From IMG/VR virus record IMGVR_UViG_3300044641_009805, positions 214,436 to 278,435 of that record: DNA of 64,000 bases; one strand, given 5' to 3'. Shown piece by piece: positions 4,471 to 64,000 of this stretch (position 1 is its first letter; every line of letters starts with the position of its first letter). The notes under the pieces were generated by a model. It worked only from the letters and a program-made list of their open reading frames with translations, did not search any database and was not told the DNA's origin. The translations under genes and the position numbers were made by a program.

Positions 4471-5091
4471 ATGAAATCTCTACAAGAAAAATCTAAAGTA
4501 AATCCAGGTTACATAAAAGGGTTATCAGGATCCGAGGCCGCCAAGCGTAAGAAAGAAATTGAGCGCGGTTCTAAAACGGACTCAGATGATCCTTCTGCAT
4601 ATGATGATGACAGATTTCAGACAGATTTTACTTCTAGTGGAGAAAGAAAAAAGACAAAACCATCGAAACACACCAAAGCCTTTAAACGTATGTTTGGTGA
4701 GATGGTTGACGAGTTTGATGATGTTTTAGAAGAAGACTTTGGGTCTGATGGCTTGCTTGAAGAAGACATTGATTTTTTGATCGATCTATCTCTACTTAGA
4801 GAGTTCATAGGCGAGATTTTGAATGAGAAGAAAAAAGGATCAAACGTCACGACAGCCTTAAAAAATAAGGCTGAAAAGTCAGGCGCTCCTATGGGCGCTC
4901 TTCGTGCGATCTATAATAAAGGATTGGCTGCGTGGAGAACTGGCCATCGCCCTGGTGCTTCGCCACATCAGTGGGCGATGGCAAGAGTCAACAGCGTTCT
5001 TGCAGGAGGTCCAGCAAGAAAAGTTGATGCAGCGCAATGGGAAAAGATAAAAAAACATCGCGGTAAAAAAAGAAAGAAAAAGAAAGATTGA
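4471..5091 (+). CDS. Hypothetical viral protein (C-terminus recalls DUF5824-type viral family)
   Basis: LRAIYNKGLAAWRTGHRPGASPHQWAMARVNS; internal LLREFIGEILNE motif; family label from memory only. Confidence 0.7.
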   Translation: MKSLQEKSKVNPGYIKGLSGSEAAKRKKEIERGSKTDSDDPSAYDDDRFQTDFTSSGERKKTKPSKHTKAFKRMFGEMVDEFDDVLEEDFGSDGLLEEDIDFLIDLSLLREFIGEILNEKKKGSNVTTALKNKAEKSGAPMGALRAIYNKGLAAWRTGHRPGASPHQWAMARVNSVLAGGPARKVDAAQWEKIKKHRGKKRKKKKD

Positions 5092-5117
5092 AATTTCTCA
5101 AAGCGGCAATGTATAAT
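5088..5117 (+). promoter_or_regulatory. Sigma70-like promoter, leaderless architecture
   Basis: TTGAAA-N18-TATAAT-N7-ATG(5125). Confidence 0.7.
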
Positions 5118-5124
5118 CAATTAC

Positions 5125-5550
5125 ATGTCGCCTGAAAAAGATCGTTTGCTTCGACAAAGATATCCAAAGATTTTTAAAACGTCTGAACACAGCGATGAAC
5201 CCCTGGACATGTGGGGAATTGAATGTGAAGATGGCTGGTTTGAACTGATTGATACACTTTGTAACAGGATTCAATCTCATATCGAATGGCGCTCGAAGAA
5301 CGCACAAGACGAAGAAGAACTTGAAGATCTCCAAGTAGTAGCACAGCAAGTAAAAGAAAAGTTCGGCGGACTTCGTTTTTACGTTGCAGGTGGAGACGAT
5401 ATTACAGAAGCTTTTATTTCTTTTGCCGAAACGATGTCCTACAAGATTTGTGAGACGTGTGGTCAACCCGGAAGGCAACAAGACGACAGAGGCTGGATAC
5501 ATACTGTCTGTGATCCATGCTTTGAGAAGAGAGCGCGGAGAACAGCATGA
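5125..5550 (+). CDS. Conserved phage hypothetical protein
   Basis: DGWFELID, QVKEKFGGLRFY, CETCG..CDPC. Confidence 0.8.
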   Translation: MSPEKDRLLRQRYPKIFKTSEHSDEPLDMWGIECEDGWFELIDTLCNRIQSHIEWRSKNAQDEEELEDLQVVAQQVKEKFGGLRFYVAGGDDITEAFISFAETMSYKICETCGQPGRQQDDRGWIHTVCDPCFEKRARRTA

Positions 5551-6314
5551 AGAAAGTTGAGTTTAAAGATGGACTTGCTATTAATGGCGATTCTTCTTCA
5601 AGAGATACAATTGAAGAAGTTAAAACGTGGCTAGGCGAAGCAGGAGGTGTACCTCTGATCGCAACCGATCCTCCTTATGGTAACATAGTCATGCAGGAAT
5701 GGGATCGAGTAAAAATGACTGACGACCAATACGCCGACCACATGATCCAATGGACACGATTGTGGTCGGAGATTCTACTTCAAGGAGGAGCATTCTATGT
5801 CTGGGGAGGTATTGGACTTCCTGATTTCCGTCCTTTCATCAAGTATCTCACGAGAGTTGAAGATGATAACTTTAAGATGGCCAATCTCATTACCTGGTCA
5901 AAGAAGCGGGCATATGGAGTCCAAAACAACTATCTCTTTACGCGTGAAGAACTCGCATACTTCATCAAGGGAAATCCAAAGAAACCCCTGAAGTTTAATA
6001 TTCCCCTCCTCGAAACGAAGCGCGGATACGCTGGATATAATGAAAAGTATCCAGCCAAGAGTGAGTTCTTTCGTCGAACCAACGTTTGGATGGACATTAA
6101 CGAGATTTTTAAGGGAAAACTTCACCCAACTCAAAAAGCTGCTCGTGTGGTAGAGATTCCTATAGAGGTCCATACAGATCCAGGAGATGTCGTCATTGAC
6201 CCATTCGCGGGTAGTGGTGCTACTGCATTTGCCGCTCGCAAACTTGGTAGAAAATTTATTGTTATCGAAAAAGATGAAGAGATCTTCGGTAAGATGATAG
6301 AGAGGTTACAATGA
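5547..6314 (+). CDS. DNA N6-adenine/N4-cytosine methyltransferase (beta class)
   Basis: DPPY catalytic motif precedes DPFAGSG SAM-binding motif; HPTQK. Confidence 0.9.
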   Translation: MKKVEFKDGLAINGDSSSRDTIEEVKTWLGEAGGVPLIATDPPYGNIVMQEWDRVKMTDDQYADHMIQWTRLWSEILLQGGAFYVWGGIGLPDFRPFIKYLTRVEDDNFKMANLITWSKKRAYGVQNNYLFTREELAYFIKGNPKKPLKFNIPLLETKRGYAGYNEKYPAKSEFFRRTNVWMDINEIFKGKLHPTQKAARVVEIPIEVHTDPGDVVIDPFAGSGATAFAARKLGRKFIVIEKDEEIFGKMIERLQ

Positions 6315-6559
6315 AAAAACAGTTTAACTCGCAAAAAGAATATTGGGAATCTTTACTTAAAGAATATTCTAAGATCTATTTGAACGCCCAGGACAAGATT
6401 GCTAGATATGAGTCTGTAATGTCTAGAAAATCTTCTAAAAATTGGTCTGATGATAAAAAGAAAAAGTTTCTTAATAGGCTCACGACAGCAAACAAAGAAC
6501 TTAATGAATCTTTTGACATCATTAATCAACTACAAATGAGATTAAATCAATCAGAATAA
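6311..6559 (+). CDS. Hypothetical coiled-coil protein
   Basis: 82 aa ORF coupled to previous gene. Confidence 0.65.
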   Translation: MKKQFNSQKEYWESLLKEYSKIYLNAQDKIARYESVMSRKSSKNWSDDKKKKFLNRLTTANKELNESFDIINQLQMRLNQSE

Positions 6560-6585
6560 CACCATCTTAATAAAAGAATTAAATT

Positions 6586-7419
6586 ATGAGATTGGCATGG
6601 GCGACTGATATACATTTAGATTGCGTTGATGATGTTGTTTCAAAGGTGCAAGATCTTGCTGTTCGAGGTGCTGAATGTGAGTCTTTCATATTGTCTGGTG
6701 ATATCACCATAGCACCTCACTTGTTACAACACCTTAGAATCATAGAAAGCATCATACAAAAACCTTTTTATTTCGTACTTGGCAATCACGATTACTATTT
6801 TTCAGATATTCTTTCGGTTAGAAAGAGTGTGGCTGATGCATGTCGATCAATGTCATTCGCCAGATACTTGGCCATGACGCCTTACGTTAGATTGACTCCT
6901 CACGTCGCTTTAGTCGGTCATGATGGATGGTATGACGCGATGAATGGTAACTTCAGAGACAGTGATGTTATCATGAATGATTGGATACGGATTGCAGATT
7001 TTTCTCCTGCAATCCTTCCTTCGTTGGGAGGTAAATCGATAAACAAAGATGTGATAATAAAAATTTCAAGAGCGATATGCAGCGCGTCTGTAAACCATAT
7101 AGCAAATGGAATAAAGGCTGCCATTCGTGACAAAAATGAACACGTCATCGTTGTCTCGCACGTTCCTCCCTTTAAAGAATCCTACAATAGTACGAAGTAC
7201 GGACCAACAAATTCTGCTTCAATTTTGCCGTGGTATACATCTAAAACCTTAGGTGATACGTTGCTATCTGCAGCAAGAGCTTATCCACGTGTTAAGTTCA
7301 CGATTTTATCGGGACACTCTCACAGTCATTATGATGAGTATTTGCTCAACAACTTGAACGTTCGCGTCGGAAATTCTCAATATGGTTCACCACAAATTGC
7401 AGGGATCATCGATATTTAA
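6586..7419 (+). CDS. Calcineurin-like metallophosphoesterase
   Basis: DIH, GDI, GNHD, SH, GHSH motifs. Confidence 0.9.
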   Translation: MRLAWATDIHLDCVDDVVSKVQDLAVRGAECESFILSGDITIAPHLLQHLRIIESIIQKPFYFVLGNHDYYFSDILSVRKSVADACRSMSFARYLAMTPYVRLTPHVALVGHDGWYDAMNGNFRDSDVIMNDWIRIADFSPAILPSLGGKSINKDVIIKISRAICSASVNHIANGIKAAIRDKNEHVIVVSHVPPFKESYNSTKYGPTNSASILPWYTSKTLGDTLLSAARAYPRVKFTILSGHSHSHYDEYLLNNLNVRVGNSQYGSPQIAGIIDI

Positions 7420-15359: not shown

Positions 15360-15389
15360 GTGCAAATTTAAACTTCTTTAACATACAAT
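15360..15389 (+). promoter_or_regulatory. GTGNAA-N18-TANNNT promoter, leaderless
   Basis: GTGCAA-N18-TACAAT-N7-ATG(15397). Confidence 0.75.
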
Positions 15390-15396
15390 AGTTCTG

Positions 15397-18300
15397 ATGA
15401 CGAGAGACAATAAAACAGCTTCACCTACCAGATTCGTGGGTCTTCATGCGCATTCTACATTTTCGCAGTACGATGGTCTCGATTATCCTCAAGAGCACAT
15501 TGATTACGTGCTAGAAAATGGCATGGACGCTTGGTCGTTGACTGACCATGGTAACATGAATGGATTCTGTCACGCTTTTCTTCATGCCGAAAAGATGAAA
15601 AAGTCAGGAAAGAACTTTAAGTTTATCCCTGGCTGCGAGATGTACGTTCATCCTGATCTTACCCAGTGGAAAAAAGATCTGGAAGCGTCCAAGGTAAAAC
15701 CTGCAAAGGACGAGTCCATCATTACTCCTATCACCGCGGTCGTTGATGGCGATGACGAGACGACAGACGTTGGTACGGATGAAGCAGCTTTGACTGTTGA
15801 GAACGAGGACGAGACGAAGTCAGGTAAATACAATGATCCCGTCAAGCGTCGTCATCATCTAGTCGTTCTACCAAAAACCTCAGTAGGCCTTCAACGTCTG
15901 TTCCACCTGGTATCCAGGGGATACATGGAAGGATTTTATCGATTCCCTCGAATCGATTATTCGATGCTAAAAGAAGCAGCAAAAGGTGATCATCTCATGA
16001 TCAGCACAGCTTGTTTAGGTGGTCCTTTGGCTTTCGACGCTTTCGAACAGCTTCAAAAAGTTCCGTTCGAAGAATTGAAACACCAATTGCTTAACGACAG
16101 ATCACTTTTGGATCGTATCATTGCTACGATGAGTAACACTTACGACAAGTTAGTTGATGCCGTCGGTCGCGATAACGTATGTCTTGAACTACAATTCAAC
16201 AAGCTCCCTGCTCAGCATCTTGTTAATCGAGCTCTCATTGAGTTTTCCAAACGAAATTCCCTGCGCGATAGAGTGGTGGTTACTTGCGACTCGCACTATT
16301 CACGACCAGAAAACTGGAAAGAACGAGAGATTTATAAGAAGCTAGGTTGGCTTAACTATCAAAACTTTGATCCAAGCTTGTTGCCTAAGTCTAAGGACGA
16401 TTTAAAATGCGAATTGTATCCCAAAAATGCCAAGCAGGTGTGGGAATCTTATTTGTCTACGACGGAAGGCATGGATTTCTATGACGATGAATTTGTTAAG
16501 GACGCGATTGAAAGAACCCATGATATCGTTCATAACGAATTAGGTGACATTCAGCCTGACAAGACAATGAAGCTTCCTTCTTACGTGATCCCTGAGGGAA
16601 CCACGGAAGATAAGGCACTCGTGGTTGCGTGTAAAAATGGATTGAAGTGGAGAGGTCTAGACTCAAGACAAGACTACATCGACAGAATCAAATATGAGCT
16701 AGGCATCATCAAAGGTAAGAAGTTCTCTAGGTACTTCTTGACGATGAAGGCTATCATGGATATTGCTCGTGAGCATATGTTGATCGGACCAGGTCGTGGA
16801 TCAGCTGCTGGTTCACTTGTAGCCTATGTTCTTGGAATTACGAATTTGGATCCAATTGAATATGATCTTTCTTTTGAAAGATTTTTGAATCCTTCTAGAA
16901 CAGGTGCCCCTGATATTGACTCTGACATCTCTGATCGAGATTTATTGATTGAACTTCTTAGAAAGAATCTTGGCGAAAGGAACGTCATTCCTATCTCCAA
17001 CTACAACACCTTCAGGTTAAAGAGCCTCATTAAAGATATTGCTCGATTCTACAGTATCCCTTTTGAGGAAGTCAACGCTGCTCTTGCTCCTGTCGAGGAT
17101 GATGTCAAGAAGGAGGTCTTTAAACCAGGAACAGACAAGAACTTGTTCGTTCTTACATACGAAGACGCCATCAAATATTCAAAGTCTCTACAAGACTTCA
17201 TTGCTGCACACCCCGAGGTGGCCGAACCAATTGAGATTTTATTCAAGCAAAACCGTTCTTTGGGCCGCCACGCCGGTGGCGTCATCGTATCAGAAGATGT
17301 CGCCGAAAGAATGCCTCTAATCCTTGCTCGCGGTGAGGCCCAGACACCTTGGGTCGAAGGCATGAACTATAAACATCTCGAAGAATTTGGGTGGATCAAG
17401 TTCGATCTGCTAGGTCTTGAAACCTTGCGTATCATCGAACGATGCATCGGCCTAATCCTCGAGCGCCGGGAAGGTGTAAAAAATCCTGATTTTAAGCAAA
17501 TTCGAGCGTGGTTTGATAAGCATATGGATCCGAAGAACATTGATCTGAACGATCAAAAAGTCTACGAATATGTTTACCACGAAGGTAGGTTCGCAGGTAT
17601 CTTCCAGCTAACACAAACAGGTGCTCAGCGGCTGTTTACGAAGGCTAAACCACGTAGCATCATCGACATTGCCACTCTTACTTCGATCTATCGTCCTGGT
17701 CCTCTTGCGGCTAACGTGGATAAACTTTATATTGATGCAAAGAATAATCCTGACAAGATTGATTATCAACATCCGTTGATCAAAAAAGTCCTCGAGTCTA
17801 CATACGGTTGTATCATCTTTCAAGAGCAGACCATGAGGTTATGTTCTGTGGTGGCGGGATTCCCTGAGGCTGAGACTGACACCATCCGTCGTAACATTAT
17901 GAAGCGCAGCGCGTCTAAGAAAGACGATGCTGCAGCGGATGCGAGGAAAGCAAAAGAAGAGTTCGTGTTAGGTGCTGTGAAGAATGGCGTAAACGAGAAG
18001 GTCGCATCTGAACTATACGATAAGATTCTATTCTTCTCTGGATACGGCTTTAATGCCTCGCATGCCGTGTCTTATGCAATTGATTCTTACTATTGCGCTT
18101 GGCTCTTGACTTATTATGAAGAGGAATGGCTATGCGCATATCTCGAATCGATGTCAGGAAACGACGAGAAACGAGCCAAAGCTTTTTCAGAAGTAAAAGC
18201 GCTAGGATATAAGATCGTTCCAATTGACGTAAACTACGCGACAAAGAGCTGGACAATCTTGGAAGGTAAACGATTCATGCCAAGCTTCTTGTCTTGCAAG

Positions 18301-30763: not shown

Positions 30764-31521
30764 AAATGTTTAATGCTACCATAGCCGCTGCAGTACAATT
30801 CGAACCGAAGATTCTTGACGTACAAAAGAATCTTTCTACTGCTCGTTATCTTGCTCATGAAGCCGCAGCAAAAGGAGCGAGCGTAGTGGTACTACCAGAA
30901 TTGTGCATCAGCGGTTATGTATTGCGCAATAAACAAGAAGCTTCTCAATGTGCGCAAACTAGAGATGGTTACCAAACTGAAGCATTTCTGCCAATAGCTA
31001 AACAGTACAATTGTCACATCGTGGTCGGATACGTAGAATTGAATGAAGGAAAGCTGTATAATTCAGCTGTAGTCGTAGGTCCAAATGGCGTTAGCGCTAA
31101 TTTTCAAAAACACAATCTTTGGGCTAACGATTATTTGTGGGCAGAGTCTTCAGAAGCATTTAATCCCGTTGTTATAACAAGAGCTGGTCGACTTGGCGCT
31201 TTGATCTGTAGAGATGCTATGAATGTCTATAGAGAAAGTTACAAGTTTTACAAAGAAGATCAAAAATTCTATAGAAAAGGGTCGGTTGATACTATAGCAT
31301 TATTGACAAACTGGGGTGGGAATGTAGGTCATCCGGATCATACATGGGTAGAACTTGCCGAACAAACGAATGCAAATATCATCGTTTCTAATCGTGTTGG
31401 AAAAGAAAGAGATTTGACATTCAAAGGCGGTTCTTGTATAGTTACTCGCAACAAACAAGTCTACACACATGGTTCCAGCTTTTTGAACGAAGCCGTCGTT
31501 GGTGGTATAATTGAACTATGA
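30760..31521 (+). CDS. Carbon-nitrogen hydrolase (nitrilase superfamily)
   Basis: Glu-Lys-Cys triad: LPEL, FQKHNL, LICRD; YNSAVV, SNRVG. Confidence 0.9.
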   Translation: MKMFNATIAAAVQFEPKILDVQKNLSTARYLAHEAAAKGASVVVLPELCISGYVLRNKQEASQCAQTRDGYQTEAFLPIAKQYNCHIVVGYVELNEGKLYNSAVVVGPNGVSANFQKHNLWANDYLWAESSEAFNPVVITRAGRLGALICRDAMNVYRESYKFYKEDQKFYRKGSVDTIALLTNWGGNVGHPDHTWVELAEQTNANIIVSNRVGKERDLTFKGGSCIVTRNKQVYTHGSSFLNEAVVGGIIEL

Positions 31522-32979: not shown

Positions 32980-32988
32980 TATTATAAT
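32960..32988 (+). promoter_or_regulatory. Sigma70-like promoter (TTGAAC-17 class)
   Basis: TTGAAC-N17-TATAAT-N9-ATG(32998). Confidence 0.6.
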
Positions 32989-36105: not shown

Positions 36106-36111
36106 CATTGT

Positions 36112-36408
36112 ATGTCTAAAAAAAATGCTTCTCAAAAAAATTACAACGTAGAAACGATGCAGCCAGATGAGATTAACTCTCTGCGCACTCTAGTTAAAGA
36201 GTTTATCCACAAGATCGAATCTATTGATAATGAGATAGAGCTCTTAAAAGGAGATCGAAAAGAGATCATTGAAGAGTACTCTGAAAAGCTAGATATGAAA
36301 ACTTTGCAATCTGCTCTTAAGGTCGTCAAGATCCAACAAGCAGTTGCGCATAAAGATACGTTTGATCTATTTCTTGAGGCATTGACGGGCGTAGAAAAAT
36401 CAACTTGA
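36112..36408 (+). CDS. GapR/DUF2312/T4 DsbA-like dsDNA-binding protein
   Basis: LRTLVKEFIHKIESIDNEIELLKGDRKEII..LDMKTLQSALK pattern. Confidence 0.6.
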   Translation: MSKKNASQKNYNVETMQPDEINSLRTLVKEFIHKIESIDNEIELLKGDRKEIIEEYSEKLDMKTLQSALKVVKIQQAVAHKDTFDLFLEALTGVEKST

Positions 36409-39008: not shown

Positions 39009-39193
39009 AGATGAGCCTTGTTGAAGGTGTAGATTACACGATAGAAAACAACAAGATGGTTTTTACAAAAGATTTTCTTTTGAGGCGTGGGTATTGTTGC
39101 AATTCTCGTTGTCGAAATTGTCCATACTCTAAAGAGATTCGTTCAGGAGATTCACGAGATGAATCTTCTGTGCAAATCGTCAAAAGTTCATGA
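39005..39193 (+). CDS. Small Cys-rich protein (DUF5522-like)
   Basis: DY.IEN..MVFT..FLLRRGYCCNSRCRNCPY. Confidence 0.7.
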   Translation: MKMSLVEGVDYTIENNKMVFTKDFLLRRGYCCNSRCRNCPYSKEIRSGDSRDESSVQIVKSS

Positions 39194-39199
39194 TACCAT
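39170..39199 (+). promoter_or_regulatory. GTGNAA-N18-TANNNT promoter, leaderless
   Basis: GTGCAA-N18-TACCAT-N6-ATG(39206). Confidence 0.8.
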
Positions 39200-39205
39200 G
39201 TTGGT

Positions 39206-39787
39206 ATGGGTATCGGTAAGATTGAGCTGTCTAAAGCAAATTCCATTGCAAACGCTGTTCTTAGTCACATCATGCCGTCAATCGACCGCGGTGAAATTGC
39301 TGGATCTATTCGCAGGCAAAAAGACGTCGTCGGCGACATTGAGATCGTAGCCATCTCAACGCAACGAGACCGTTTGTTGTCGTTGCTGTCGGATGTCGGC
39401 CAACACATCAAACCTGGAGTTCCTGGTGCGGTTCCTTGGTCTCCAAAAGCCTCCGCAAAGTATCTTCGGGTTCGCTTACAGGAAGGCATGAATCTAGATC
39501 TTTTCATGGCATCACCAGAGAACTGGGGTGGTCTTTTTCTCATGCGAACTGGCTCAGGCGCGGGTCTTGATGGCAATTCCTTCAATGGCTTCACTCCTGG
39601 AATCTTTTCAAGATGGAAGAAGCTCTCTGGTGGTGGCCGCATGACCGACTGCATGCCGACGATGCCGACAGGCGAACAACTATGGATTCCTGAGGAAAAA
39701 GATTTCTTTGATTTGCTTGAAATGAACTTTGTGCCACCGGCAGAAAGAACCGGTCGCCAAGTCATCAAGAAATACATTCGCGGTTGA
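39206..39787 (+). CDS. Minimal DNA polymerase X (catalytic and C-terminal domains only)
   Basis: IAGSIRRQK..VGDIEIV, LDLF, GGLFLMRTGS. Confidence 0.85.
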   Translation: MGIGKIELSKANSIANAVLSHIMPSIDRGEIAGSIRRQKDVVGDIEIVAISTQRDRLLSLLSDVGQHIKPGVPGAVPWSPKASAKYLRVRLQEGMNLDLFMASPENWGGLFLMRTGSGAGLDGNSFNGFTPGIFSRWKKLSGGGRMTDCMPTMPTGEQLWIPEEKDFFDLLEMNFVPPAERTGRQVIKKYIRG

Positions 39788-41089: not shown

Positions 41090-41119
41090 GTGCAATGTTG
41101 TAAAGACTCATGATATGAT
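41090..41119 (+). promoter_or_regulatory. GTGNAA-N18-TANNNT promoter, leaderless
   Basis: GTGCAA-N18-TATGAT-N6-ATG(41126). Confidence 0.8.
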
Positions 41120-41125
41120 GGTCTC

Positions 41126-41953
41126 ATGACCATCCTCTGCATCGACTTTATGAACGTCGCCCATCGTGCTCGCAGCGGATTTACCTCCGGCGAGCACGCT
41201 GTCATTTACAACTTCTTTCGTCAGTTCAGGGCACTCGTCGATCAATTCAAGCCCAACCGCGTTTACCTCGCCCTCGAAGGCAGGCCTGTGCATCGCCATG
41301 AGGCGATGACGGAGTACAAGGCCAATCGAATCGTGGAGGAAAACGACCCACGCCATGAGGACCTCATGAAGTTCTTTCGACAAAAAGACCGCATTGTGGA
41401 ACTCCTCTCCACATACTTCCCTGTCTCTCTCGTTCGACATCCAACTTCGGAGGCCGACGACACGATCTACAACCTGATCCGTACATCATCCACAGCCGTT
41501 CCTTGGATCGTAGTATCGTCGGACACTGACTTCATCCAAGCCCTACAAGAATTCCCGCATATTTCTTTGTATAATCCGGTCAAAAAGATTTTCGTGAATT
41601 CTCCTGACCATCCTTATGTCACCTGGAAGGCTTTGCGAGGCGATTCATCCGACAACATCCCCGGCATCCCTGGCGTCGGTGATAAGACTGCTGAGAAACT
41701 AGCTTGCGATCCTGAACTCTTGTCGGAGTTCTTGTCAGACAAGACGAAGGCGGAGATTTTCCAACGAAATTACAACCTTATTTCTTTTCGAGAATGGAAT
41801 GACGAGGAAAAGATGAAGATGTCATCTTCATCTCCCATTCGAGATTGGGACATCGTAAAAACGACTTTTACTGATATGGGCTTCCATTCTATCACTAAGG
41901 AAGGATCTTGGCAAAAATTCTTAAATACCTTTGAAAGCCTGTGGGGTAGTTGA
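41126..41953 (+). CDS. 5'-3' exonuclease / flap endonuclease
   Basis: IDFMN, YKANR, EADD, SSDTDF, ALRGDSSDNIPGIPGVGDKTA. Confidence 0.93.
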   Translation: MTILCIDFMNVAHRARSGFTSGEHAVIYNFFRQFRALVDQFKPNRVYLALEGRPVHRHEAMTEYKANRIVEENDPRHEDLMKFFRQKDRIVELLSTYFPVSLVRHPTSEADDTIYNLIRTSSTAVPWIVVSSDTDFIQALQEFPHISLYNPVKKIFVNSPDHPYVTWKALRGDSSDNIPGIPGVGDKTAEKLACDPELLSEFLSDKTKAEIFQRNYNLISFREWNDEEKMKMSSSSPIRDWDIVKTTFTDMGFHSITKEGSWQKFLNTFESLWGS

Positions 41954-44687: not shown

Positions 44688-44716
44688 TTGAACAATCAAA
44701 GTTTTTACAATAAATT
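44688..44716 (+). promoter_or_regulatory. Sigma70-like promoter (TTGAAC-17 class), leaderless
   Basis: TTGAAC-N17-TAAATT-N6-ATG(44723). Confidence 0.6.
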
Positions 44717-44722
44717 ATTAGT

Positions 44723-45145
44723 ATGCGTTTTCCAAAAACAATTTCTTTAGTAGTCATTTCAGCTTTTTTCGTAACATCTTGCGTTGATGTTGCGCCTTCT
44801 CCTTCTTCGAGCAGTAAGTGTGCCGATGACAAATGTCTGTCTCCACAAGAGGAACCTCCACCTTCGTCTACAGATGACAGCACATCAATTGCAGCTGAAG
44901 AATGTTTGTGGTGCCTCGGGGCGGCTTCAGAAGTATGCCTCGATGAGAATGAAGATTGCCTCTCGTCAATGAGTTGTAAAGCCTGGAAAGATTGCACGGA
45001 ATCTTGCGTGGTCAGCGATGCCGGAGAAAATTGTTACAATACTTGTGATGAGTCTATCCAAACGCTTTTCACGCCGAGCAAAGTAAAAACTTGCAATTGT
45101 GACATTTGTTACGCACAATGTTTTAACATGTGTCCTCAGCAGTAG
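44723..45145 (+). CDS. Cys-rich lipoprotein
   Basis: FFVTSC lipobox; dense CxxC/CxxxC repeats. Confidence 0.8.
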   Translation: MRFPKTISLVVISAFFVTSCVDVAPSPSSSSKCADDKCLSPQEEPPPSSTDDSTSIAAEECLWCLGAASEVCLDENEDCLSSMSCKAWKDCTESCVVSDAGENCYNTCDESIQTLFTPSKVKTCNCDICYAQCFNMCPQQ

Positions 45146-52910: not shown

Positions 52911-52940
52911 GTGCAATTCTCTCGTCGTGGATGATACCAT
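52911..52940 (+). promoter_or_regulatory. GTGNAA-N18-TANNNT promoter, leaderless
   Basis: GTGCAA-N18-TACCAT-N6-ATG(52947). Confidence 0.8.
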
Positions 52941-52946
52941 ACTGAT

Positions 52947-53195
52947 ATGAAGTTCCTCGATGCCTACATTGCAGACATTCCTATGGGTTCCTTGATGTAC
53001 CCAAGTGCGGATGCGCGTAACAATTGCAAGGGTGGAAACTACTACCTCGAGGATCTCATGCGGTTTGTTGGCGATTCAGAGATCTTTCCTGCTGTCGTCA
53101 TCCCAGGAAAGTATGAGACTTTCGTCCAGGTTCTCACACCGACCGGCATCCACACCATGAGCAAATTCTCCATGGTTTCTTACGAGAAAACATGA
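52947..53195 (+). CDS. xGDLV-family-like small protein
   Basis: PMGSLMY...VQVLTPTG. Confidence 0.7.
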   Translation: MKFLDAYIADIPMGSLMYPSADARNNCKGGNYYLEDLMRFVGDSEIFPAVVIPGKYETFVQVLTPTGIHTMSKFSMVSYEKT

Positions 53196-54933: not shown

Positions 54934-54963
54934 GTGAAATCCCCTCACATCCCATGATATACT
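54934..54963 (+). promoter_or_regulatory. GTGNAA-N18-TANNNT promoter, leaderless
   Basis: GTGAAA-N18-TATACT-N6-ATG(54970). Confidence 0.82.
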
Positions 54964-54969
54964 GATCCC

Positions 54970-55221
54970 ATGGACCTCAGGGTTGGCAACATGGTGACCA
55001 CACCAAGCTACGTGGATCTCTGCACCGATCCATCCCTCTATTATTCCTCCACGATCTTCAGCAGGTATCAGCTCGGAATCGTTGTGGAACTCCTGGAGAC
55101 TCCCGACGCCATCGGCCGAGAGCAGATCACCTATGCAAAGGTTCTCTCCTCCACCGGTCACATTGGTTGGTGTGTGGCCCGTTTCCTTATCCCTGCATCC
55201 CAATATCGTCGAGGATCATGA
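54970..55221 (+). CDS. xGDLV-family small protein
   Basis: LRVGNMV...AKVLSSTGHIGW. Confidence 0.78.
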   Translation: MDLRVGNMVTTPSYVDLCTDPSLYYSSTIFSRYQLGIVVELLETPDAIGREQITYAKVLSSTGHIGWCVARFLIPASQYRRGS

Positions 55222-55624: not shown

Positions 55625-55821
55625 GAACCTTGATCAGGGTTTGTAACACCGGTGGTGCCATACCCTACATCGAAATCTTCAACAATCGAATCGATTCATC
55701 CCTGGTTATTCCCTATGGTTCACTCGGAATCATAACAGAACAACACTCATACCGTTCCCAGGTGGCATTTCCCAACGCCCACGGGTGGATCCCCAACGAA
55801 TTCCTTGAAATCATTCGGTGA
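55612..55821 (+). CDS. xGDLV-family small protein
   Basis: MYPVGTLIRV...AHGW. Confidence 0.75.
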   Translation: MYPVGTLIRVCNTGGAIPYIEIFNNRIDSSLVIPYGSLGIITEQHSYRSQVAFPNAHGWIPNEFLEIIR

Positions 55822-55846
55822 AAACCCACTAAAAATGTATTAGTAT
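55818..55846 (+). promoter_or_regulatory. Variant of the GTGNAA promoter
   Basis: GTGAAA-N17-TAGTAT-N8-ATG(55855). Confidence 0.6.
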
Positions 55847-55854
55847 ACAACACC

Positions 55855-56142
55855 ATGGCCATCTATCGAGTCTCATTCCTCACCGATCTCCTGGTGGAAT
55901 GTGAAAATGAAAAAGAAGCCGAGATGATCGGATTCAAACACCTCACCGATGAGGTTGATAACCGAGGATCCGAGGTTTTCTCAATCAAACTCCTAGAATC
56001 TCCGGATCAGGTTCGCAGGTGGGAAAGAGGTTCCTTACCATGGAGGGATACCCAACGAGATCTCCGCGGTGAACGTGAAAAACCTGTGGAACAAATCCTC
56101 AGAGAGGCACAAAATGGCAATCTACCAAAAACACCAGGTTGA
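55855..56142 (+). CDS. Hypothetical protein, paralog of 59600-59842
   Basis: YRVSF...ERGSLPWR. Confidence 0.78.
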   Translation: MAIYRVSFLTDLLVECENEKEAEMIGFKHLTDEVDNRGSEVFSIKLLESPDQVRRWERGSLPWRDTQRDLRGEREKPVEQILREAQNGNLPKTPG

Positions 56143-57236: not shown

Positions 57237-57406
57237 GCCCCGGTGATCTCGTTATTTTCTACGAAGATCCCAACCTTGTTCTCGAGGTACACAAACACCT
57301 CAACATTGTTATCCTCTTCAACCCCAGGCTCCAAACCATGGATCGTTGGGGATACAATTGGATCAGTAAAAACTTCACCGTGGTGAAAAACCCACATTCC
57401 ACATGA
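57233..57406 (+). CDS. xGDLV-family small protein (57 aa, below cutoff)
   Basis: MSPGDLVIF; TTGA coupling. Confidence 0.7.
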   Translation: MSPGDLVIFYEDPNLVLEVHKHLNIVILFNPRLQTMDRWGYNWISKNFTVVKNPHST

Positions 57407-57412
57407 TACCAT
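57383..57412 (+). promoter_or_regulatory. GTGNAA-N18-TANNNT promoter, leaderless
   Basis: GTGAAA-N18-TACCAT-N6-ATG(57419). Confidence 0.8.
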
Positions 57413-57418
57413 ATAACC

Positions 57419-57592
57419 ATGGTTCCTGGTTCCCTTCTCATCTCAATCGAACCTCACCACCATGTTCCACCCGGTATCGCCCTTCTCCTCTCCGAATCCC
57501 CCACCGGAGCATGTGAAATCATGTGGAACAATGGAACCACCTCCATCTACTCCTACTTCTTCCTCAAAAGGAACTTCAAGGTTCTCCAATGA
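57419..57592 (+). CDS. xGDLV-family small protein (57 aa, below cutoff)
   Basis: MVPGSLLI...FKVLQ. Confidence 0.75.
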   Translation: MVPGSLLISIEPHHHVPPGIALLLSESPTGACEIMWNNGTTSIYSYFFLKRNFKVLQ

Positions 57593-58493: not shown

Positions 58494-58696
58494 GAGTTGG
58501 TGATCTCGTTCTCTACTACAACTCCGATAGGATTCCCCTCCCCCTCCTCGGAATCATTCTCCAAGAAAAGTTCTTGGATCTCCAAGAACTCAACCTCATC
58601 ACGGTGGATCATCGTTTGTTCTCGGTTCTACTGAGCAACGGATCCGAGAAAATCATACCGGATTCCTACCTCAGGCACCTCAACGAAGTGGAGTGA
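58490..58696 (+). CDS. xGDLV-family small protein
   Basis: MRVGDLVLY...SVLLSNG. Confidence 0.78.
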   Translation: MRVGDLVLYYNSDRIPLPLLGIILQEKFLDLQELNLITVDHRLFSVLLSNGSEKIIPDSYLRHLNEVE

Positions 58697-58722
58697 AAAT
58701 CCCCACCTCGATAGGATAGGAT
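58693..58722 (+). promoter_or_regulatory. GTGNAA-N18-TANNNT promoter, leaderless
   Basis: GTGAAA-N18-TAGGAT-N6-ATG(58729). Confidence 0.82.
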
Positions 58723-58728
58723 AACATC

Positions 58729-59229
58729 ATGGCAACGAAGAAATCCTCCAGTTCCACCAAGAAATCCACCGAGAAAAAGAACTTCGTGTTGAAGTTCCAC
58801 ACATCCCTCGATGGAGAGAATAACTCCTGGGATTCACCTATGTTCTACAGTGAATCCGGGCAAGGTTGGGTGGCCGATATCGGAAGTGCAACTCGATATT
58901 CCGAGAGCGGTGCGGATGGGATCATCCTGGAACTTCTCAAGGTGGAAAAGATCGCATCCGAGTTGATCGATGTGAACGAGAAACCGGATAACCTCTTCTC
59001 ACTTCACACGGTGTTCCTCAATGTGAACAACATCCCGCAGATCATCAACAAGGTTCCCCAGTTCATCGGTGATACCTACCACCTCATTCCCTCCCACGAG
59101 AACTGGAGTGAGGAGGATCTGGTGGATATGTTGAAGGAGGATCGTTTCACGGTTCTATGGGATCCGGTTGGAAGTTTTGTTCCTGAGGATAACGAGAGTT
59201 GGTTGAATGGTTTGATGGGTAAATCATGA
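58729..59229 (+). CDS. Hypothetical protein
   Basis: 166 aa ORF behind promoter. Confidence 0.8.
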   Translation: MATKKSSSSTKKSTEKKNFVLKFHTSLDGENNSWDSPMFYSESGQGWVADIGSATRYSESGADGIILELLKVEKIASELIDVNEKPDNLFSLHTVFLNVNNIPQIINKVPQFIGDTYHLIPSHENWSEEDLVDMLKEDRFTVLWDPVGSFVPEDNESWLNGLMGKS

Positions 59230-59408: not shown

Positions 59409-59590
59409 ACCTCCCTCGAATTCGAAGTGGATTTCGTTTGTTGTTGAGAAGTTCCACCGGGTTCTTCACCTCCTTCCCCAACTGGAACCTGATGGGTATC
59501 AGGGCCCGGCAGGTTGGAATATGTTTACGTGCCATTCGAAGTGGATTTTTTGATGAACCTCCGGTGAAAAACCCAACCGGTGGAGGATAG
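59405..59590 (+). CDS. Possible basic hypothetical protein
   Basis: GTGA coupling; IRSGF occurs twice. Confidence 0.45.
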   Translation: MNLPRIRSGFRLLLRSSTGFFTSFPNWNLMGIRARQVGICLRAIRSGFFDEPPVKNPTGGG

Positions 59591-59593
59591 TAT
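59564..59593 (+). promoter_or_regulatory. GTGNAA-N18-TANNNT promoter, leaderless
   Basis: GTGAAA-N18-TAGTAT-N6-ATG(59600). Confidence 0.82.
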
Positions 59594-59599
59594 TGAATC

Positions 59600-59842
59600 A
59601 TGTTGTACCGAGTAACATTTCACACCGAGATCCTTGTGGATTGTGTTGATCCTCACGAGGCCGAGAGTATCGGTTTCCGGAACCTATCCGAGGAGATTCG
59701 AGGTTCATCGGTGTACAAGGTTGAGAAGATCGATTCGGTGGATCAACTTCACCGGGAGGAACGTGGATCCTTACCATGGAGATCCACCGAGAGGCACCTT
59801 GAACCTGAACTTCGGGTAGAGGAAATCCTAGGAGGAAAGTGA
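59600..59842 (+). CDS. Hypothetical protein, paralog of 55855-56142
   Basis: YRVTF...ERGSLPWR. Confidence 0.78.
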   Translation: MLYRVTFHTEILVDCVDPHEAESIGFRNLSEEIRGSSVYKVEKIDSVDQLHREERGSLPWRSTERHLEPELRVEEILGGK

Positions 59843-61355: not shown

Positions 61356-61385
61356 GTGTAAATTTAAGGGATCATAGAGTAGGAT
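61356..61385 (+). promoter_or_regulatory. GTGNAA-N18-TANNNT promoter, leaderless
   Basis: GTGTAA-N18-TAGGAT-N7-ATG(61393). Confidence 0.75.
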
Positions 61386-61392
61386 AAAATTT

Positions 61393-61569
61393 ATGAAATT
61401 TAAGATTTTTGGCATGGTTCTATGGAAGGAAAAACCTGGAGTTATTTCTTCCGGTTCCTCATGGTGCCTTGTGTATGGTGGGTGTTACCTACACGTTTGT
61501 GATTCCCTCCCACAACTCCTACTGGAACTCATCACCGAGTTCAGGAGCGAAAAACACATGGTGGGGTAA
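61393..61569 (+). CDS. 58 aa hypothetical protein (preferred over the 61409 frame)
   Basis: MKFKIFGMVLWKEKPG...; starts exactly at the promoter-predicted ATG. Confidence 0.65.
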   Translation: MKFKIFGMVLWKEKPGVISSGSSWCLVYGGCYLHVCDSLPQLLLELITEFRSEKHMVG

Positions 61570-61571
61570 CC

Positions 61572-61601
61572 GTGAAATTCCCCACCGCGGGATGATATAC
61601 T
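61572..61601 (+). promoter_or_regulatory. GTGNAA-N18-TANNNT promoter, leaderless
   Basis: GTGAAA-N18-TATACT-N6-ATG(61608). Confidence 0.82.
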
Positions 61602-61607
61602 TGAAAC

Positions 61608-61826
61608 ATGCTTCCCGGTAATCTTGTCAAAAACCTGTGCTTCACCCACCTCTATTCCACGGTGAAACAGGTTCACAGAGGACTTCCGGAGGATGTGATT
61701 CCAATCGATTCTCTACTCACCATTCTCACCCCACCCAACGGAACACTGATCAAGGTACTGTACCGTGGGAAGATTGGATGGGTAAACACTAACTTCCTGG
61801 AGGCAATCTACAATGAAACCCGGTGA
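61608..61826 (+). CDS. xGDLV-family small protein
   Basis: MLPGNLVK...IKVLYRGKIGW. Confidence 0.8.
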   Translation: MLPGNLVKNLCFTHLYSTVKQVHRGLPEDVIPIDSLLTILTPPNGTLIKVLYRGKIGWVNTNFLEAIYNETR

Positions 61827-63023: not shown

Positions 63024-63211
63024 AACGAGGAACCCTGGTTAGATTCAACGTTTACCCCTATTCCTCATGGGGATTGGGGATTCTCCTCGGTGAGAAACCG
63101 TTTGTGGATAGAGAAGGTAGGAATCACCGTGGATTTTATGATGTTTTAACCCAGTGTGGGGTTAAACTCGTTTCCGATGAGTTCTTCGAGAGGTTGAGCT
63201 GGGATGTTTAA
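63020..63211 (+). CDS. xGDLV-family small protein
   Basis: MKRGTLVRF...YDVLTQCG. Confidence 0.78.
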   Translation: MKRGTLVRFNVYPYSSWGLGILLGEKPFVDREGRNHRGFYDVLTQCGVKLVSDEFFERLSWDV

Positions 63212-63410
63212 CACCGGTGATCTGGTTCTAATCACCGCGGATTTTCTGGAACCACATGAACCCCGTGTGGGGATATTCTGGAGCGATAAGGTTCCACTGG
63301 ATGAATGGGGAGATCAGGTTGCAGGTGAGTGTGATTGTATCGTTTTCTGGAACGAAGATTTCATTCCTTTCATATGGGAAAACCTAACACTCCTCTCGGA
63401 GGCACCATGA
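63204..63410 (+). CDS. xGDLV-family small protein
   Basis: MFNTGDLVLI. Confidence 0.78.
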   Translation: MFNTGDLVLITADFLEPHEPRVGIFWSDKVPLDEWGDQVAGECDCIVFWNEDFIPFIWENLTLLSEAP

Positions 63411-63655
63411 AACCCGGTGATTTGGTTGGTGTGAAGGATGGTGATAAAGGTAACACCTACTGGTTATACCATCCTGAATCCCCAATTACCATTAACCTCA
63501 TCCCCACCGATATTCGGTTTGGATTCTCGGATACCGGTTTGATATTGAAAACCCATATGAACAATGGGATGTACCCTTACGCAACCTTCCTCAAGATTCT
63601 CACCCCTCGGGGAATCGGTTGGGCAAATGAGAATTGGGTGGAGGTTCTCAAGTGA
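63407..63655 (+). CDS. xGDLV-family small protein
   Basis: MKPGDLVGV...LKILTPRGIGW. Confidence 0.8.
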   Translation: MKPGDLVGVKDGDKGNTYWLYHPESPITINLIPTDIRFGFSDTGLILKTHMNNGMYPYATFLKILTPRGIGWANENWVEVLK

Positions 63656-63918
63656 AACCCGGATCACAAGTTCGTTTAATTCCTGAGTTAGAAGGTAACG
63701 ATTGTTCTCTTCCCCTATGGGATGATCCACCTGATTTCACTTCAATCTATAGGAAGAACCACACCGGGAGGTTCCGTTACTCCGAGGTGGGAGTGATTCT
63801 TGAACAAAGATACATTCTCAATGATGTTCATGATTCTCTACCCACCAGTTTTTGGGTGAAGGTGTTGTGCCCCGGTGGGATTGGTTGGATAAAGAGATGT
63901 GATCTGGAGTTGGTGTGA
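63652..63918 (+). CDS. xGDLV-family small protein
   Basis: MKPGSQVRL...VKVLCPGGIGW. Confidence 0.78.
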   Translation: MKPGSQVRLIPELEGNDCSLPLWDDPPDFTSIYRKNHTGRFRYSEVGVILEQRYILNDVHDSLPTSFWVKVLCPGGIGWIKRCDLELV

Positions 63919-63944
63919 AAAGTTGAAACCTGGTGTGTTAGGAT
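63915..63944 (+). promoter_or_regulatory. GTGNAA-N18-TANNNT promoter, leaderless
   Basis: GTGAAA-N18-TAGGAT-N7-ATG(63952). Confidence 0.78.
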
Positions 63945-63951
63945 TGAATCT

Positions 63952-64000
63952 ATGAAACCCGGTAATCTGGTTCGAGTTACCAACACCCTAACCCCTCTCT
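63952..64000 (+). CDS. xGDLV-family protein, 3'-truncated by window edge
   Basis: MKPGNLVRV... Confidence 0.7.
   Translation, partial: MKPGNLVRVTNTLTPL

What the first reader, a model, noticed from the sequence alone, without database searches (positions are those of the whole stretch)
5088..63954. Thirteen copies of a rigid promoter with a fixed 6-8 nt gap to ATG: a leaderless regulon
Seen: (G/T)TG(A/C/T)AA-N18-TANNNT-N6/7-ATG at 5088, 15360 (dnaE), 39170 (PolX), 41090 (5'-3' exonuclease), 52911, 54934, 57383, 58693, 59564, 61356, 61572, 63915, plus an N17/N8 variant at 55818. None has an SD between -10 and ATG. Several -35 boxes overlap the upstream TGA stop (gTGAaa), and the spacer often ends in TGA (extended -10). 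A related TTGAAC-N17-TA(T/A)A(A/T)T class occurs at 32960, 36077, 44688. Established: sigma70 starts about 6-7 nt after the -10 hexamer, so these mRNAs would begin at or next to AUG. Inference: early and replication genes are translated as leaderless mRNAs, perhaps resisting host translation shut-off or a phage-imposed block on SD-led initiation.
Basis: partly seen in the sequence, partly recalled or inferred. Interest (0 to 1): 0.62.

Follow-up and report, generated by a model that had tools for sequence, protein, structure and literature searches.

The report
Leaderless early promoters of a lake phage
An uncultured 278-kb lake-water phage places one rigid promoter so that transcription should begin at the A of the ATG of about 50 early and replication genes, a large apparently leaderless gene set. 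This is a bigger and differently timed version of something already known in Thermus phages.

Summary
With an 18-nt spacer, ATG lies exactly 6 nt after the -10 in 46 cases; every other spacer/gap cell holds 0-5.

The consensus is cR-GTGCAAAGT-N13-GnTAnnnT-nnnnCC-ATG. The A of ATG is the 7th base after the -10, the position where sigma-70-type polymerases usually start.

The same box also precedes a tRNA array and a few genes with ordinary Shine-Dalgarno (SD) leaders, so it is a promoter and not a coding repeat. The 41 downstream proteins are unrelated to one another.

About 20-34 copies each occur in three close relatives and none in 12 more distant ones, whose equivalent genes are SD-led.

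Leaderless early genes are GC-rich (GC3 up to 0.93). Late genes are AT-rich, SD-led and matched by 14 phage tRNAs.

The idea of a phage block on SD-led initiation is not supported. No RNA data exist, so the start sites remain inferred. The host is unknown; the polymerase is most likely host RNA polymerase with its primary sigma.

It is a new variant of a known kind; the nearest precedent is Thermus phage phiYS40.

The parts
5088..5127 (+). TTGAAA-N18-TATAAT-N7-ATG; ORF 5125-5550 (141 aa, no Pfam match). The -35 box overlaps the TGA stop of ORF 4471-5091. Near-consensus class.
15360..15399 (+). GTGCAA-N18-TACAAT-N7-ATG before dnaE (15397-18981, 1194 aa). The closest relatives keep GTGCAAA with a 6-nt gap; more distant ones have TATAAT plus an SD leader.
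31483..31520 (+). TTGAAC-N17-TATAAT-N6-ATG; ORF 31518-31898 (126 aa).
32960..33000 (+). TTGAAC-N17-TATAAT-N9-ATG; ORF 32998-33207 (69 aa). Would have a leader of about 3 nt rather than none.
36077..36114 (+). TTGAAC-N17-TATAAT-N6-ATG; ATG at 36112, in frame with ORF 36073-36408.
39170..39208 (+). GTGCAA-N18-(TGA)TACCAT-N6-ATG; ORF 39206-39787 (193 aa, weak DNA polymerase beta palm/thumb matches below the Pfam cut-off).
41090..41128 (+). GTGCAA-N18-(TGA)TATGAT-N6-ATG; ORF 41126-41953 (275 aa, 5'-3' exonuclease, PF02739 and PF01367).
44688..44725 (+). TTGAAC-N17-TAAATT-N6-ATG; ORF 44723-45145 (140 aa).
52911..52949 (+). GTGCAA-N18-(TGA)TACCAT-N6-ATG; ORF 52947-53195 (82 aa, no Pfam match).
54934..54972 (+). 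GTGAAATCCCC...-(TGA)TATACT-N6-ATG; ORF 54970-55221 (83 aa). Belongs to the 'GTGAAA..CCC' subclass.
55818..55857 (+). Variant GTGAAA-N17-TAGTAT-N8-ATG; ORF 55855-56142 (95 aa). The -35 box overlaps the TGA stop of ORF 55546-55821. Would have a 1-3 nt leader.
57383..57421 (+). GTGAAAAACCC...-(TGA)TACCAT-N6-ATG; ORF 57419-57592 (57 aa).
58693..58731 (+). GTGAAAATCCCC...-GGATAGGAT-N6-ATG; ORF 58729-59229 (166 aa). Overlaps the upstream TGA stop. Variant lake contigs break or are replaced exactly at 58693.
59564..59602 (+). GTGAAAAACCC...-GGATAGTAT-N6-ATG; ORF 59600-59842 (80 aa). One lake variant joins 58712 to 59584, which removes the gene between this promoter and the previous copy.
61356..61395 (+). 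GTGTAA-N18-(G)AGTAGGAT-N7-ATG; ORF 61393-61569 (58 aa).
61572..61610 (+). GTGAAATTCCCC...-(TGA)TATACT-N6-ATG; ORF 61608-61826 (72 aa, starts MLPGNLV, a member of the MKPGDLV paralog family).
63915..63954 (+). GTGAAA-N18-(G)TGTTAGGAT-N7-ATG; ORF from 63952 (starts MKPGNLV), cut by the end of the contig. Overlaps the upstream TGA stop.
2998..3037 (+). Possible extra member: GTGAAA-N18-TAAACT-N7-ATG. The ATG at 3035 is in frame with ORF 3014-3382. Low confidence.

Best explanation
The motif is the early/middle promoter of an uncultured freshwater jumbo phage. The window is the last 64 kb of a 278-kb record that is 84% complete.

The promoter has a -35-like box (GTGCAAAGT in the main cluster, GTGAAA..CCC at the window's right end). 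A rigid 18-nt gap separates it from an extended -10 (GnTAnnnT), followed by 6 nt that usually end in CC.

RNA polymerase, most likely the host core enzyme with the host's primary sigma factor, should start at the 7th base after the -10. In about 80% of copies that base is the A of an ATG that opens a gene. The transcript would therefore begin with AUG, carry no Shine-Dalgarno sequence, and be translated as a leaderless mRNA by host ribosomes.

Each roughly 39-nt promoter-plus-ATG unit precedes an unrelated, mostly small, GC-rich gene with host-like codon usage. Downstream genes of the same operons, and all late genes inspected, use ordinary SD leaders.

Shown by sequence: the motif, its geometry, its enrichment, its link to real coding frames, its use before tRNAs and SD-led genes, and its restriction to one subclade.

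Inferred: the start site, which sigma factor reads the promoter, the early timing, and the identity of the host (probably GC-rich and proficient in leaderless translation).
For: 1. Geometry. Spacer 18/gap 6 holds 46 sites against 0-3 in neighbouring cells. In the logo, G at -14 occurs in 44/46, C at -1 in 39/46, and the A of ATG is the 7th base after the -10.

2. Enrichment. 52 hits against 0.85 expected in the genome. The weight matrix without the ATG finds 56 sites against 0 in the control.

3. Promoter function independent of coding.
- The same box stands 13 nt before tRNA-Leu, at the head of the 12-tRNA array at genome 52,059-53,806.
- It also stands 27-65 nt before four genes with AAGGAG-type SD sequences.
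- An A-tract resembling an UP element lies about 50 nt upstream of many copies.

4. The ATG is a true start.
- Coding periodicity is present in the ATG frame, and only 10 of 41 genes have any in-frame SD-plus-start within the first 150 nt.
- In relatives the frame stays open for 50 or more codons in 82% against 27% for the other frames.
- In-frame 3-nt and 15-nt indels occur just after two of the ATGs in lake variants.
- The first 40 nt of the predicted mRNAs fold less stably than random 40-mers from the same region (-5.3 against -7.9 kcal/mol).

5. Not a by-product of duplication. The 41 downstream proteins show no pairwise similarity, while the promoters average 59% identity.

6. Conservation.
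- Relatives hold 34, 26 and 20 copies, against 0 for the reversed pattern.
- 304 of 361 motif copies in related contigs have ATG at gap 6. This figure is biased upward, because those loci were fetched with an ATG-containing pattern.

7. Host polymerase rather than a phage one.
- No multisubunit or T7-type polymerase was found by Pfam.
- The phage sigma lacks region 4.2. Both it and a separate region-4 protein are conserved in distant relatives that have no copy of the motif.

8. Precedent. TANNNT directly before an ORF marks leaderless genes in Actinobacteria and Deinococcus-Thermus (PMC3160421, PMC4007540, PMC12340547).
Against: - No RNA evidence exists. All 20 runs that hold the phage are DNA, and the one run labelled RNA-Seq behaves as DNA.
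- The -35 box matches TTGACA at only 3 of 6 positions, and an E. coli-type consensus scan is not enriched. A different sigma factor or an accessory factor is therefore possible.
- No terminator hairpins separate the cassettes. Each ATG may also sit internally on read-through transcripts, where AGG-containing -10 boxes such as TAAGGT, 7 nt before the ATG, could act as weak SD sequences. Mean anti-SD pairing is -4.7 kcal/mol against -3.4 for random sequence from the same region.
- 'AT' at +1/+2 also appears in four non-coding cases that begin ATC, so part of the ATG conservation may be intrinsic to the promoter.
- The record is 84% complete, so a polymerase or translation factor could lie in the missing part.
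Confidence: 0.7

Rival explanations
1. The promoter and the leaderless geometry are as described, but the promoter is read by the phage's own two-part sigma. This is an RpoD-like protein lacking region 4.2 (genome about 78.9-79.7 kb) together with a separate 104-aa region-4 protein (about 119.4-119.7 kb). On this reading the set is a middle class, not an early one.
For: - The phage encodes a sigma that covers RpoD profile positions 360-585 of 631 and stops before the -35-reading helix-turn-helix.
- A separate small protein matches Sigma70_r4 positions 12-49.
- The -35-like box GTGCAAAGT is unlike TTGACA and is far more rigid than host -35 boxes usually are.
Against: - Both proteins are conserved in complete distant relatives (G006, G009, G010) that have no copy of the motif. 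The pair therefore does not co-vary with the promoter.
- The promoter drives small GC-rich genes with host-like codon usage, in a layout typical of early host-takeover regions.
- No other promoter class was found that could express an early sigma first.
- The sigma gene itself lies just downstream of the cluster.
Confidence: 0.15
2. The repeated 36-nt box is mainly a recombination or cassette boundary, or an operator. The genes are mostly translated from read-through polycistronic mRNAs, using the AGG-rich -10 region as a weak SD. Leaderless initiation would then be minor.
For: - No terminators lie between the cassettes.
- -10 variants such as TAAGGT and TAGGAT contain SD-like AGG, and anti-SD pairing is slightly above background.
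- Homology breakpoints between phages coincide with promoters: 13 of 45 HSP ends against 5.7 +/- 2.2 expected, and 12 of 20 within the 51-76 kb cluster.
- Lake variants break at 58693 and delete the segment between two promoter copies.
- 16 of 56 copies carry a GTG-N7-9-CAC dyad that could be an operator.
Against: - Only 2% of the upstream regions pair with the anti-SD at -8 kcal/mol or better.
- The exact one-base registration of ATG to the -10 (46 sites at gap 6) is not needed for an SD or for a recombination site, but is what a leaderless start requires.
- The CC|A junction fits a pyrimidine(-1)/purine(+1) start site.
- True SD-led genes in this phage have clear AAGGAG or GGAGG boxes.
- A cassette-boundary role is compatible with the main explanation and does not replace it.
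Confidence: 0.1
3. The pattern is a chance or compositional artefact, or only the trace of recent tandem gene duplication.
For: Two adjacent copies (genome 72140 and 72398) have identical 36-nt boxes and differ only in the 2 nt upstream of the box.
Against: - 52 hits observed against 0.85 expected, and 0 hits in the reversed control.
- The downstream proteins are unrelated to one another.
- The motif is conserved in relatives with 73-98% DnaE identity.
Confidence: 0.01

Closest known systems
Leaderless transcripts of Thermus phage phiYS40; extended -10 middle/late promoters of Thermus phage P23-45
   Same: - A large lytic phage (phiYS40) makes a whole temporal class of mRNAs without leaders from host-RNAP promoters (PMC3594737).
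[quoted passage not shown]
- From my own memory: phiYS40 is AT-rich while its host is GC-rich, as is inferred here.
   Different: - In phiYS40 the leaderless class is middle/late (PMC3594737). From my own memory, its promoters lack a -35 box.
- Here a strongly conserved -35-like box is present. The class covers early-type and replication genes, and the late genes are SD-led.
- No sequence relationship to these phages was found: the best DnaE hit among cultured phages is about 30% identical.
- Changes in IF2/IF3 levels, reported for phiYS40, cannot be tested here.
Cellular leaderless genes with TANNNT next to the ORF (Actinobacteria, Deinococcus-Thermus)
   Same: - A -10 box TAnnnT with an uninformative middle lies 6-7 nt before ATG, alongside SD-led genes in the same genome (PMC3160421, PMC4007540, PMC12340547).
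- I found the same signature in Limnocylindria genomes: gap 6 holds 42 and gap 7 holds 18, against a background of 3-12, with G at -14 in 30 of 42.
   Different: - Cellular leaderless promoters show little or no -35 consensus.
- The phage copies share a rigid 9-nt upstream box at a fixed distance and form one coherent set of about 50.
PeSL promoter-terminator cassettes of T4-type phages
   Same: A short conserved early-promoter module is repeated before unrelated small genes in variable regions, and indels and replacements between related phages end at the module (PMC2839356, PMC4122927; here).
   Different: - PeSLs include a stem-loop terminator, and their genes have leaders.
- Here there is no conserved hairpin, and the module ends in the start codon itself.
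Single leaderless phage genes such as lambda cI from PRM (own knowledge)
   Same: Transcription starts at the A of AUG, and translation needs no SD.
   Different: Those are isolated regulatory genes. Here it is the default for about 50 first-in-operon genes.

Membership tests
Sigma-70-type (-35/-10) bacterial promoter | A -10 hexamer TAnnnT, with or without an extended TG/G at -15/-14 | tested here: met
   T, A and the final T are invariant by construction of the seed pattern. G at -14 occurs in 44/46 and was not part of the pattern.
Sigma-70-type (-35/-10) bacterial promoter | A -35 hexamer resembling TTGACA, 17 +/- 1 nt upstream | tested here: inconclusive
   A box is present at a fixed 18-nt distance, but it reads GTGCAA or GTGAAA (3-4 of 6 matches). 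An E. coli-type scan is not enriched: 12 found against 18.4 expected.
Sigma-70-type (-35/-10) bacterial promoter | Drives transcription of whatever lies downstream, coding or not | tested here: met
   By position only. The same box precedes a tRNA array by 13 nt and four SD-led genes by 27-65 nt, always on the gene's strand.
Sigma-70-type (-35/-10) bacterial promoter | Recognised by host primary-sigma holoenzyme | not testable with these tools
   The host is unknown. Indirect evidence: no phage RNA polymerase was found, and the phage sigma does not co-vary with the motif.
Leaderless mRNA | Transcription start at the start codon or within about 5 nt of it | not testable with these tools
   No RNA run holds the phage. 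The geometry predicts +1 on the A of ATG at gap 6 (46 sites) and a 1-nt leader at gap 7.
Leaderless mRNA | No Shine-Dalgarno sequence available on the transcript | tested here: met
   Nothing lies upstream of the AUG on the predicted transcript. Only 10 of 41 genes have an in-frame SD-plus-start within 150 nt downstream.
Leaderless mRNA | The 5'-terminal AUG opens the real coding frame | tested here: met
   Codon periodicity is present. The frame is open in 82% against 27% for control frames across 210 copies in relatives. In-frame indels occur next to the ATG.
PeSL-type mobile regulatory cassette | Early promoter joined to a stem-loop terminator | tested here: not met
   The 52 nt upstream fold no better than random sequence (-13.2 against -12.4 kcal/mol), and no shared hairpin is present.
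PeSL-type mobile regulatory cassette | Indel and replacement breakpoints between related phages fall at the motif | tested here: met
   13 of 45 HSP ends lie within 25 nt of a promoter against 5.7 +/- 2.2 expected; 12 of 20 do so in the 51-76 kb cluster, but only 1 of 25 at the window's right end. Lake variants break at 58693 and join 58712 to 59584.
phiYS40/P23-45-type leaderless middle/late promoters | Extended -10 promoter without a -35 element, serving middle and late genes (the missing -35 in phiYS40 is from my own memory) | tested here: not met
   A -35-like box is strongly conserved. The sites are absent from the 80-206 kb structural region, and the late genes are SD-led.

The most novel reading that the evidence does not exclude
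One subclade of a widespread aquatic jumbo-phage lineage moved to a GC-rich host that translates leaderless mRNA well; one weakly supported candidate is freshwater Chloroflexota of the class Limnocylindria. It then rebuilt its entire early programme as about 39-nt promoter-plus-AUG cassettes with host-like codon usage. These cassettes can be exchanged by recombination at the promoter. The late genes stayed AT-rich, SD-led and dependent on phage tRNAs. This would be a deliberate two-tier translation strategy: early proteins are made on host terms with no ribosome-binding site, and late proteins on phage terms. Some -10 boxes (TAAGGT) might also double as SD sequences on read-through transcripts.
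Probability: 0.3. Interest if true: 0.75.

Novelty: new variant of a known kind. Interest (0 to 1): 0.6.

Why it matters
- Size and consistency. If the start sites are confirmed, this would be one of the largest and most uniform leaderless gene sets in any virus: about 50 per genome, and hundreds across relatives.
- An evolutionary contrast. Sister phages with the same core genes use ordinary SD leaders. That makes the gain of leaderless initiation datable, and it can be tested as an adaptation to the host.
- Annotation. Gene finders that expect ribosome-binding sites will miscall these starts.
- A synthetic part. The unit is a compact, portable 39-nt promoter-plus-start module.
- A clue to the host. 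The split in GC content and codon usage between early and late genes, with phage tRNAs matching only the late codons, points to a GC-rich host for an abundant lake phage that has none assigned.

Tried and rejected
- RNA evidence. The run search found 20 holders in 19 studies of lake and freshwater metagenomes, none of them RNA. Laying four runs on window 57301-63300 (6,000 letters) showed that the one 'RNA-Seq' run is probably DNA and covers only a few hundred bases. No 5' ends could be read from contigs.
- Host by marker gene. No WhiB was found.
- Host by homology. The MoxR-like ATPase from the early region is found on contigs binned into MAGs of six different phyla, which points to mis-binning. 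Cultured-phage hits are only 28-31% identical and come from phages of Gram-negative bacteria and cyanobacteria. The protein atlas search with the Sir2 gene gave no usable taxonomy.
- Host by codon usage. Correlation with the phage's early genes is highest for a 74%-GC Limnocylindria genome (r = 0.96), but all GC-rich bins score 0.76-0.90, and my ORF sets include spurious frames. This is suggestive only.
- Phage RNA polymerases (PF00562, PF00623, PF00940) and the translation factors IF3, S21 and S1: none found. The PF00940 search had no positive control.
- A second rigid 'late' motif. K-mer enrichment in intergenic DNA gave only generic TATAAT-like words.
- Rfam. Only tRNAs were found in the early region, and nothing matched the tRNA-like transcript at genome 66264.
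- Dyad symmetry. GTG-N7-9-CAC across the -35 box and spacer occurs in 16 of 56 copies, so it is not a defining feature.
- Not used. The large protein searches (search for homologous proteins, the search of protein representatives), structure prediction and complex prediction were not used, because the claim does not rest on them. No alternative genetic code was used.

Full report
CONTEXT

The window is the last 64 kb (214,436-278,435) of a 278,435-bp IMG/VR virus record, linear and 84% complete by CheckV. The record is a jumbo phage found in lake-water and freshwater metagenomes from 19 studies. Its DnaE is at most about 30% identical to that of any cultured phage. It has 262 uncultured relatives in IMG/VR, many of 200-300 kb.

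- In a table of spacer by gap, spacer 18/gap 6 holds 46 sites and gap 7 holds 5. All other cells hold 0-3.
- The logo extends the motif to c-R-GTGCAAAGT-(T/C)C...A-n-G-R-TA-nnn-T-R-G-A-A-C-C-ATG. G at -14 occurs in 44/46 and C at -1 in 39/46.
- A weight matrix that excludes the ATG finds 56 sites above 12 bits and none in reversed sequence. About 45 of the 56 are followed at once by ATG or GTG.
- A matrix built only from the two boxes finds 73 sites against 13 in the control. No strong site lies between 80 and 206 kb.
- The main cluster lies outside the window, at 51-76 kb: about 35 copies, divergent around a tRNA array.
Site 32960 has a 9-nt gap.

WHAT IS IT?

It is a promoter.

- The same box heads the 12-tRNA array at genome 52,059-53,806, with the predicted +1 lying 13 nt before tRNA-Leu. 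It also stands 27-65 nt before four genes with clear SD sequences, for example ACCAAGGAGAACGCC-ATG.
- Where no ATG follows, the predicted +1 is still a purine.
- An A-tract lies about 50 nt upstream of many copies.

The ATG is a real start.

- The ATG frame shows GC1>GC2<GC3 periodicity, and few in-frame SD-plus-start alternatives lie downstream.
- In 210 unique copies from related contigs, the frame stays open for 50 or more codons in 82%, against 27% for the other two frames.
- Lake variants carry 3-nt and 15-nt in-frame insertions just after two of the ATGs.
- The first 40 nt of the predicted mRNAs are less structured than random 40-mers from the same region.

The similarity is not a trace of gene duplication. 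The 41 proteins share no detectable similarity, while the promoters average 59% identity.

Gene products include DnaE, a 5'-3' exonuclease, a weak PolX-like protein, a Sir2-family protein, a collagen-repeat protein and a DUF2201 metallopeptidase/VWA protein. A MoxR-like ATPase and a KaiC/RecA-like ATPase sit behind the same promoter but have SD leaders. Many of the rest are small proteins with no family match.

HOW IT MOST LIKELY WORKS

The last T of the -10 is followed by six bases and then the A of ATG, so A is the 7th base after the -10, preceded by CC. Sigma-70-type enzymes usually start at that distance, on a purine after a pyrimidine (established knowledge). The transcript would then begin with AUG. 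TANNNT directly before an ORF is the accepted signature of leaderless genes in Actinobacteria and Deinococcus-Thermus (PMC3160421, PMC4007540, PMC12340547).

I infer that host polymerase with its primary sigma reads these promoters, for three reasons.

- No phage polymerase was detected.
- The phage's RpoD-like sigma stops before region 4.2.
- That sigma and a separate 104-aa region-4 protein are conserved in complete distant relatives that have no copy of the motif.

The unusual, rigid -35-like box leaves room for another factor, so this part of the explanation is the least certain.

EVOLUTION AND CONTEXT

- The motif-plus-ATG occurs 34, 26 and 20 times in three relatives with DnaE 73-98% identical, one of them a complete 297,894-bp genome with terminal repeats. 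It occurs once in one relative and not at all in the 12 others searched, including three that are 92-100% complete.
- At dnaE itself, only the closest relatives keep GTGCAAA with a 6-nt gap. More distant ones have TATAAT followed by a GGAG leader.
- A complete distant relative has no TANNNT gap-6 excess and no GC-rich island. Its MKVGDLV gene family is SD-led. In this phage, members of the same family are either SD-led or leaderless.
- The leaderless early genes have 55-67% GC and GC3 up to 0.93: CTC is 60% of Leu codons and AGA is 1% of Arg codons. Late genes have GC3 near 0.3, with AGA at 52% of Arg codons.
- The 14 phage tRNAs read the A- or T-ending codons that late genes prefer. Late genes carry AGGAG leaders.
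- These features point to a GC-rich host and to early genes tuned to it.

HOST CLUES

Host clues are weak.

- Related contigs are binned with MAGs of six phyla.
- Among those, only the Limnocylindria (Chloroflexota) show an excess of (G)nTANNNT-N6-ATG.
- Codon usage fits, but it does not discriminate between the candidates.

A phage-imposed block on SD-led initiation does not fit. The same operons and all late genes inspected depend on SD sequences, and no IF3, S1 or S21 gene was found. Resistance to a host shut-off of translation can be neither supported nor excluded.

CASSETTE BEHAVIOUR

- Variant lake contigs are replaced exactly at 58693. One variant joins 58712 to 59584, which removes the gene between two promoter copies.
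- Homology blocks between this phage and two relatives end at promoters more often than chance: 13 of 45 against 5.7 +/- 2.2 expected. This holds mainly in the 51-76 kb cluster.
- The behaviour resembles the PeSL cassettes of T4-type phages (PMC2839356, PMC4122927), but without their stem-loop.

WHAT IS KNOWN, AND HOW NOVEL THIS IS

- Thermus phage phiYS40 makes most of its middle and late mRNAs leaderless (PMC3594737). P23-45 uses extended -10 promoters read by host polymerase (PMC7403470).
- The jumbo phages phiKZ and AR9 have no leaderless transcripts.
- This case differs in four ways: the gene class is early and replication rather than middle and late; a strong -35-like box is present; the leaderless genes differ sharply in composition from the rest of the genome; and the trait is confined to one subclade of an SD-using lineage.
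- I file it as a new variant of a known kind.

LIMITS

- There are no RNA data, the host is unknown, and the record is 84% complete.
- My gene calls are longest-ORF approximations.
- The 304/361 figure is biased, because those loci were fetched with an ATG-containing pattern.

Noticed in passing
outside the window: genome about 78,902-79,735 (L001:1315-2148) and about 119,383-119,697 (L002:1333-1647): The phage may encode a sigma factor in two parts. An RpoD-like protein covers regions 1.2-4.1 and stops before the -35-reading helix (Sigma70_r4 profile positions 2-18 only). A separate 104-aa protein matches Sigma70_r4 positions 12-49. Both are conserved in four near-complete relatives with 34-53% identity. 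Whether the two proteins associate was not tested.
   Followed up: partly
outside the window: genome 50-80 kb compared with 80-215 kb: Composition differs sharply within one phage genome. An early island has 55-58% GC (gene GC3 up to 0.93), while the late regions have 32-40% GC. The 14 phage tRNAs match the codons that late genes prefer (AGA, AAA, GAA, CAA, GGA, ACA, GCA, TCT, TTG).
   Followed up: yes
window 52,237-63,999 (also genome 1,575 and 4,779): A family of at least 10 small paralogs (57-82 aa) starts with MKPGDLV or a close variant, several in tandem at the right end of the contig. Lake variants delete single units (joints 61980>62207 and 63026>63214). A distant relative has about 18 SD-led copies that start MKVGDLV.
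   Followed up: partly
window 58,495-58,693 and 58,712-59,584: Population variants in other lakes replace 197 nt with 166 other letters, ending exactly at the first base of the promoter at 58693. Another variant deletes the gene between two promoter copies. This looks like cassette exchange by recombination at the promoter.
   Followed up: partly
outside the window: genome about 66,264-66,330 (+): One copy of the promoter is followed by no ORF. Its transcript begins GGGTCCATAAATG... and contains a tRNA-like T-arm (GGTTCGAATCC). Neither ARAGORN nor Rfam calls it. It may be a small RNA or a degenerate tRNA.
   Followed up: partly
outside the window: genome 69,991-70,017 and 71,683-71,769: Two promoters are followed by very short leaderless ORFs (8 and 28 codons). 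The first is followed by an SD-led gene and the second by another promoter-like box. These may be upstream ORFs or small peptides.
   Followed up: no
outside the window: genome 56,734 (- strand): One SD-led transcript from this promoter would begin AUCACCUCCUAA, which resembles the 3' end of 16S rRNA (the anti-SD). It may be chance and was not examined further.
   Followed up: no
promoter copies genome-wide, including window 54934, 57383, 58693 and 61572: 16 of 56 promoter copies carry a GTG-N7-9-CAC inverted repeat that spans the -35 box and the start of the spacer (for example CGGTGCAAAGTTCCACCG). It could be an operator for a dimeric regulator of a subset of the promoters. It remains unexplained.
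   Followed up: partly
outside the window: genome 62,143-62,217 and 62,214: The 3' end of tRNA-Arg(CCT) overlaps the first four bases of the next promoter's -35 box.
   Followed up: no
outside the window: genome 73,175-73,702; relative G003 about 142.5 kb: A leaderless gene encodes a collagen-triple-helix repeat protein (PF01391). The complete relative has a long CCTTGGAAGCC-type repeat array of the same kind.
   Followed up: no
Limnocylindria genomes G019-G047 (class of the MAG that holds locus L183): Many genomes of this freshwater Chloroflexota class show a 2- to 8-fold excess of GNTANNNT-N6-ATG over the reversed pattern. In a 74%-GC member, TANNNT peaks at gap 6 and 7 before long ORFs. The class therefore appears rich in leaderless genes.
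   Followed up: partly
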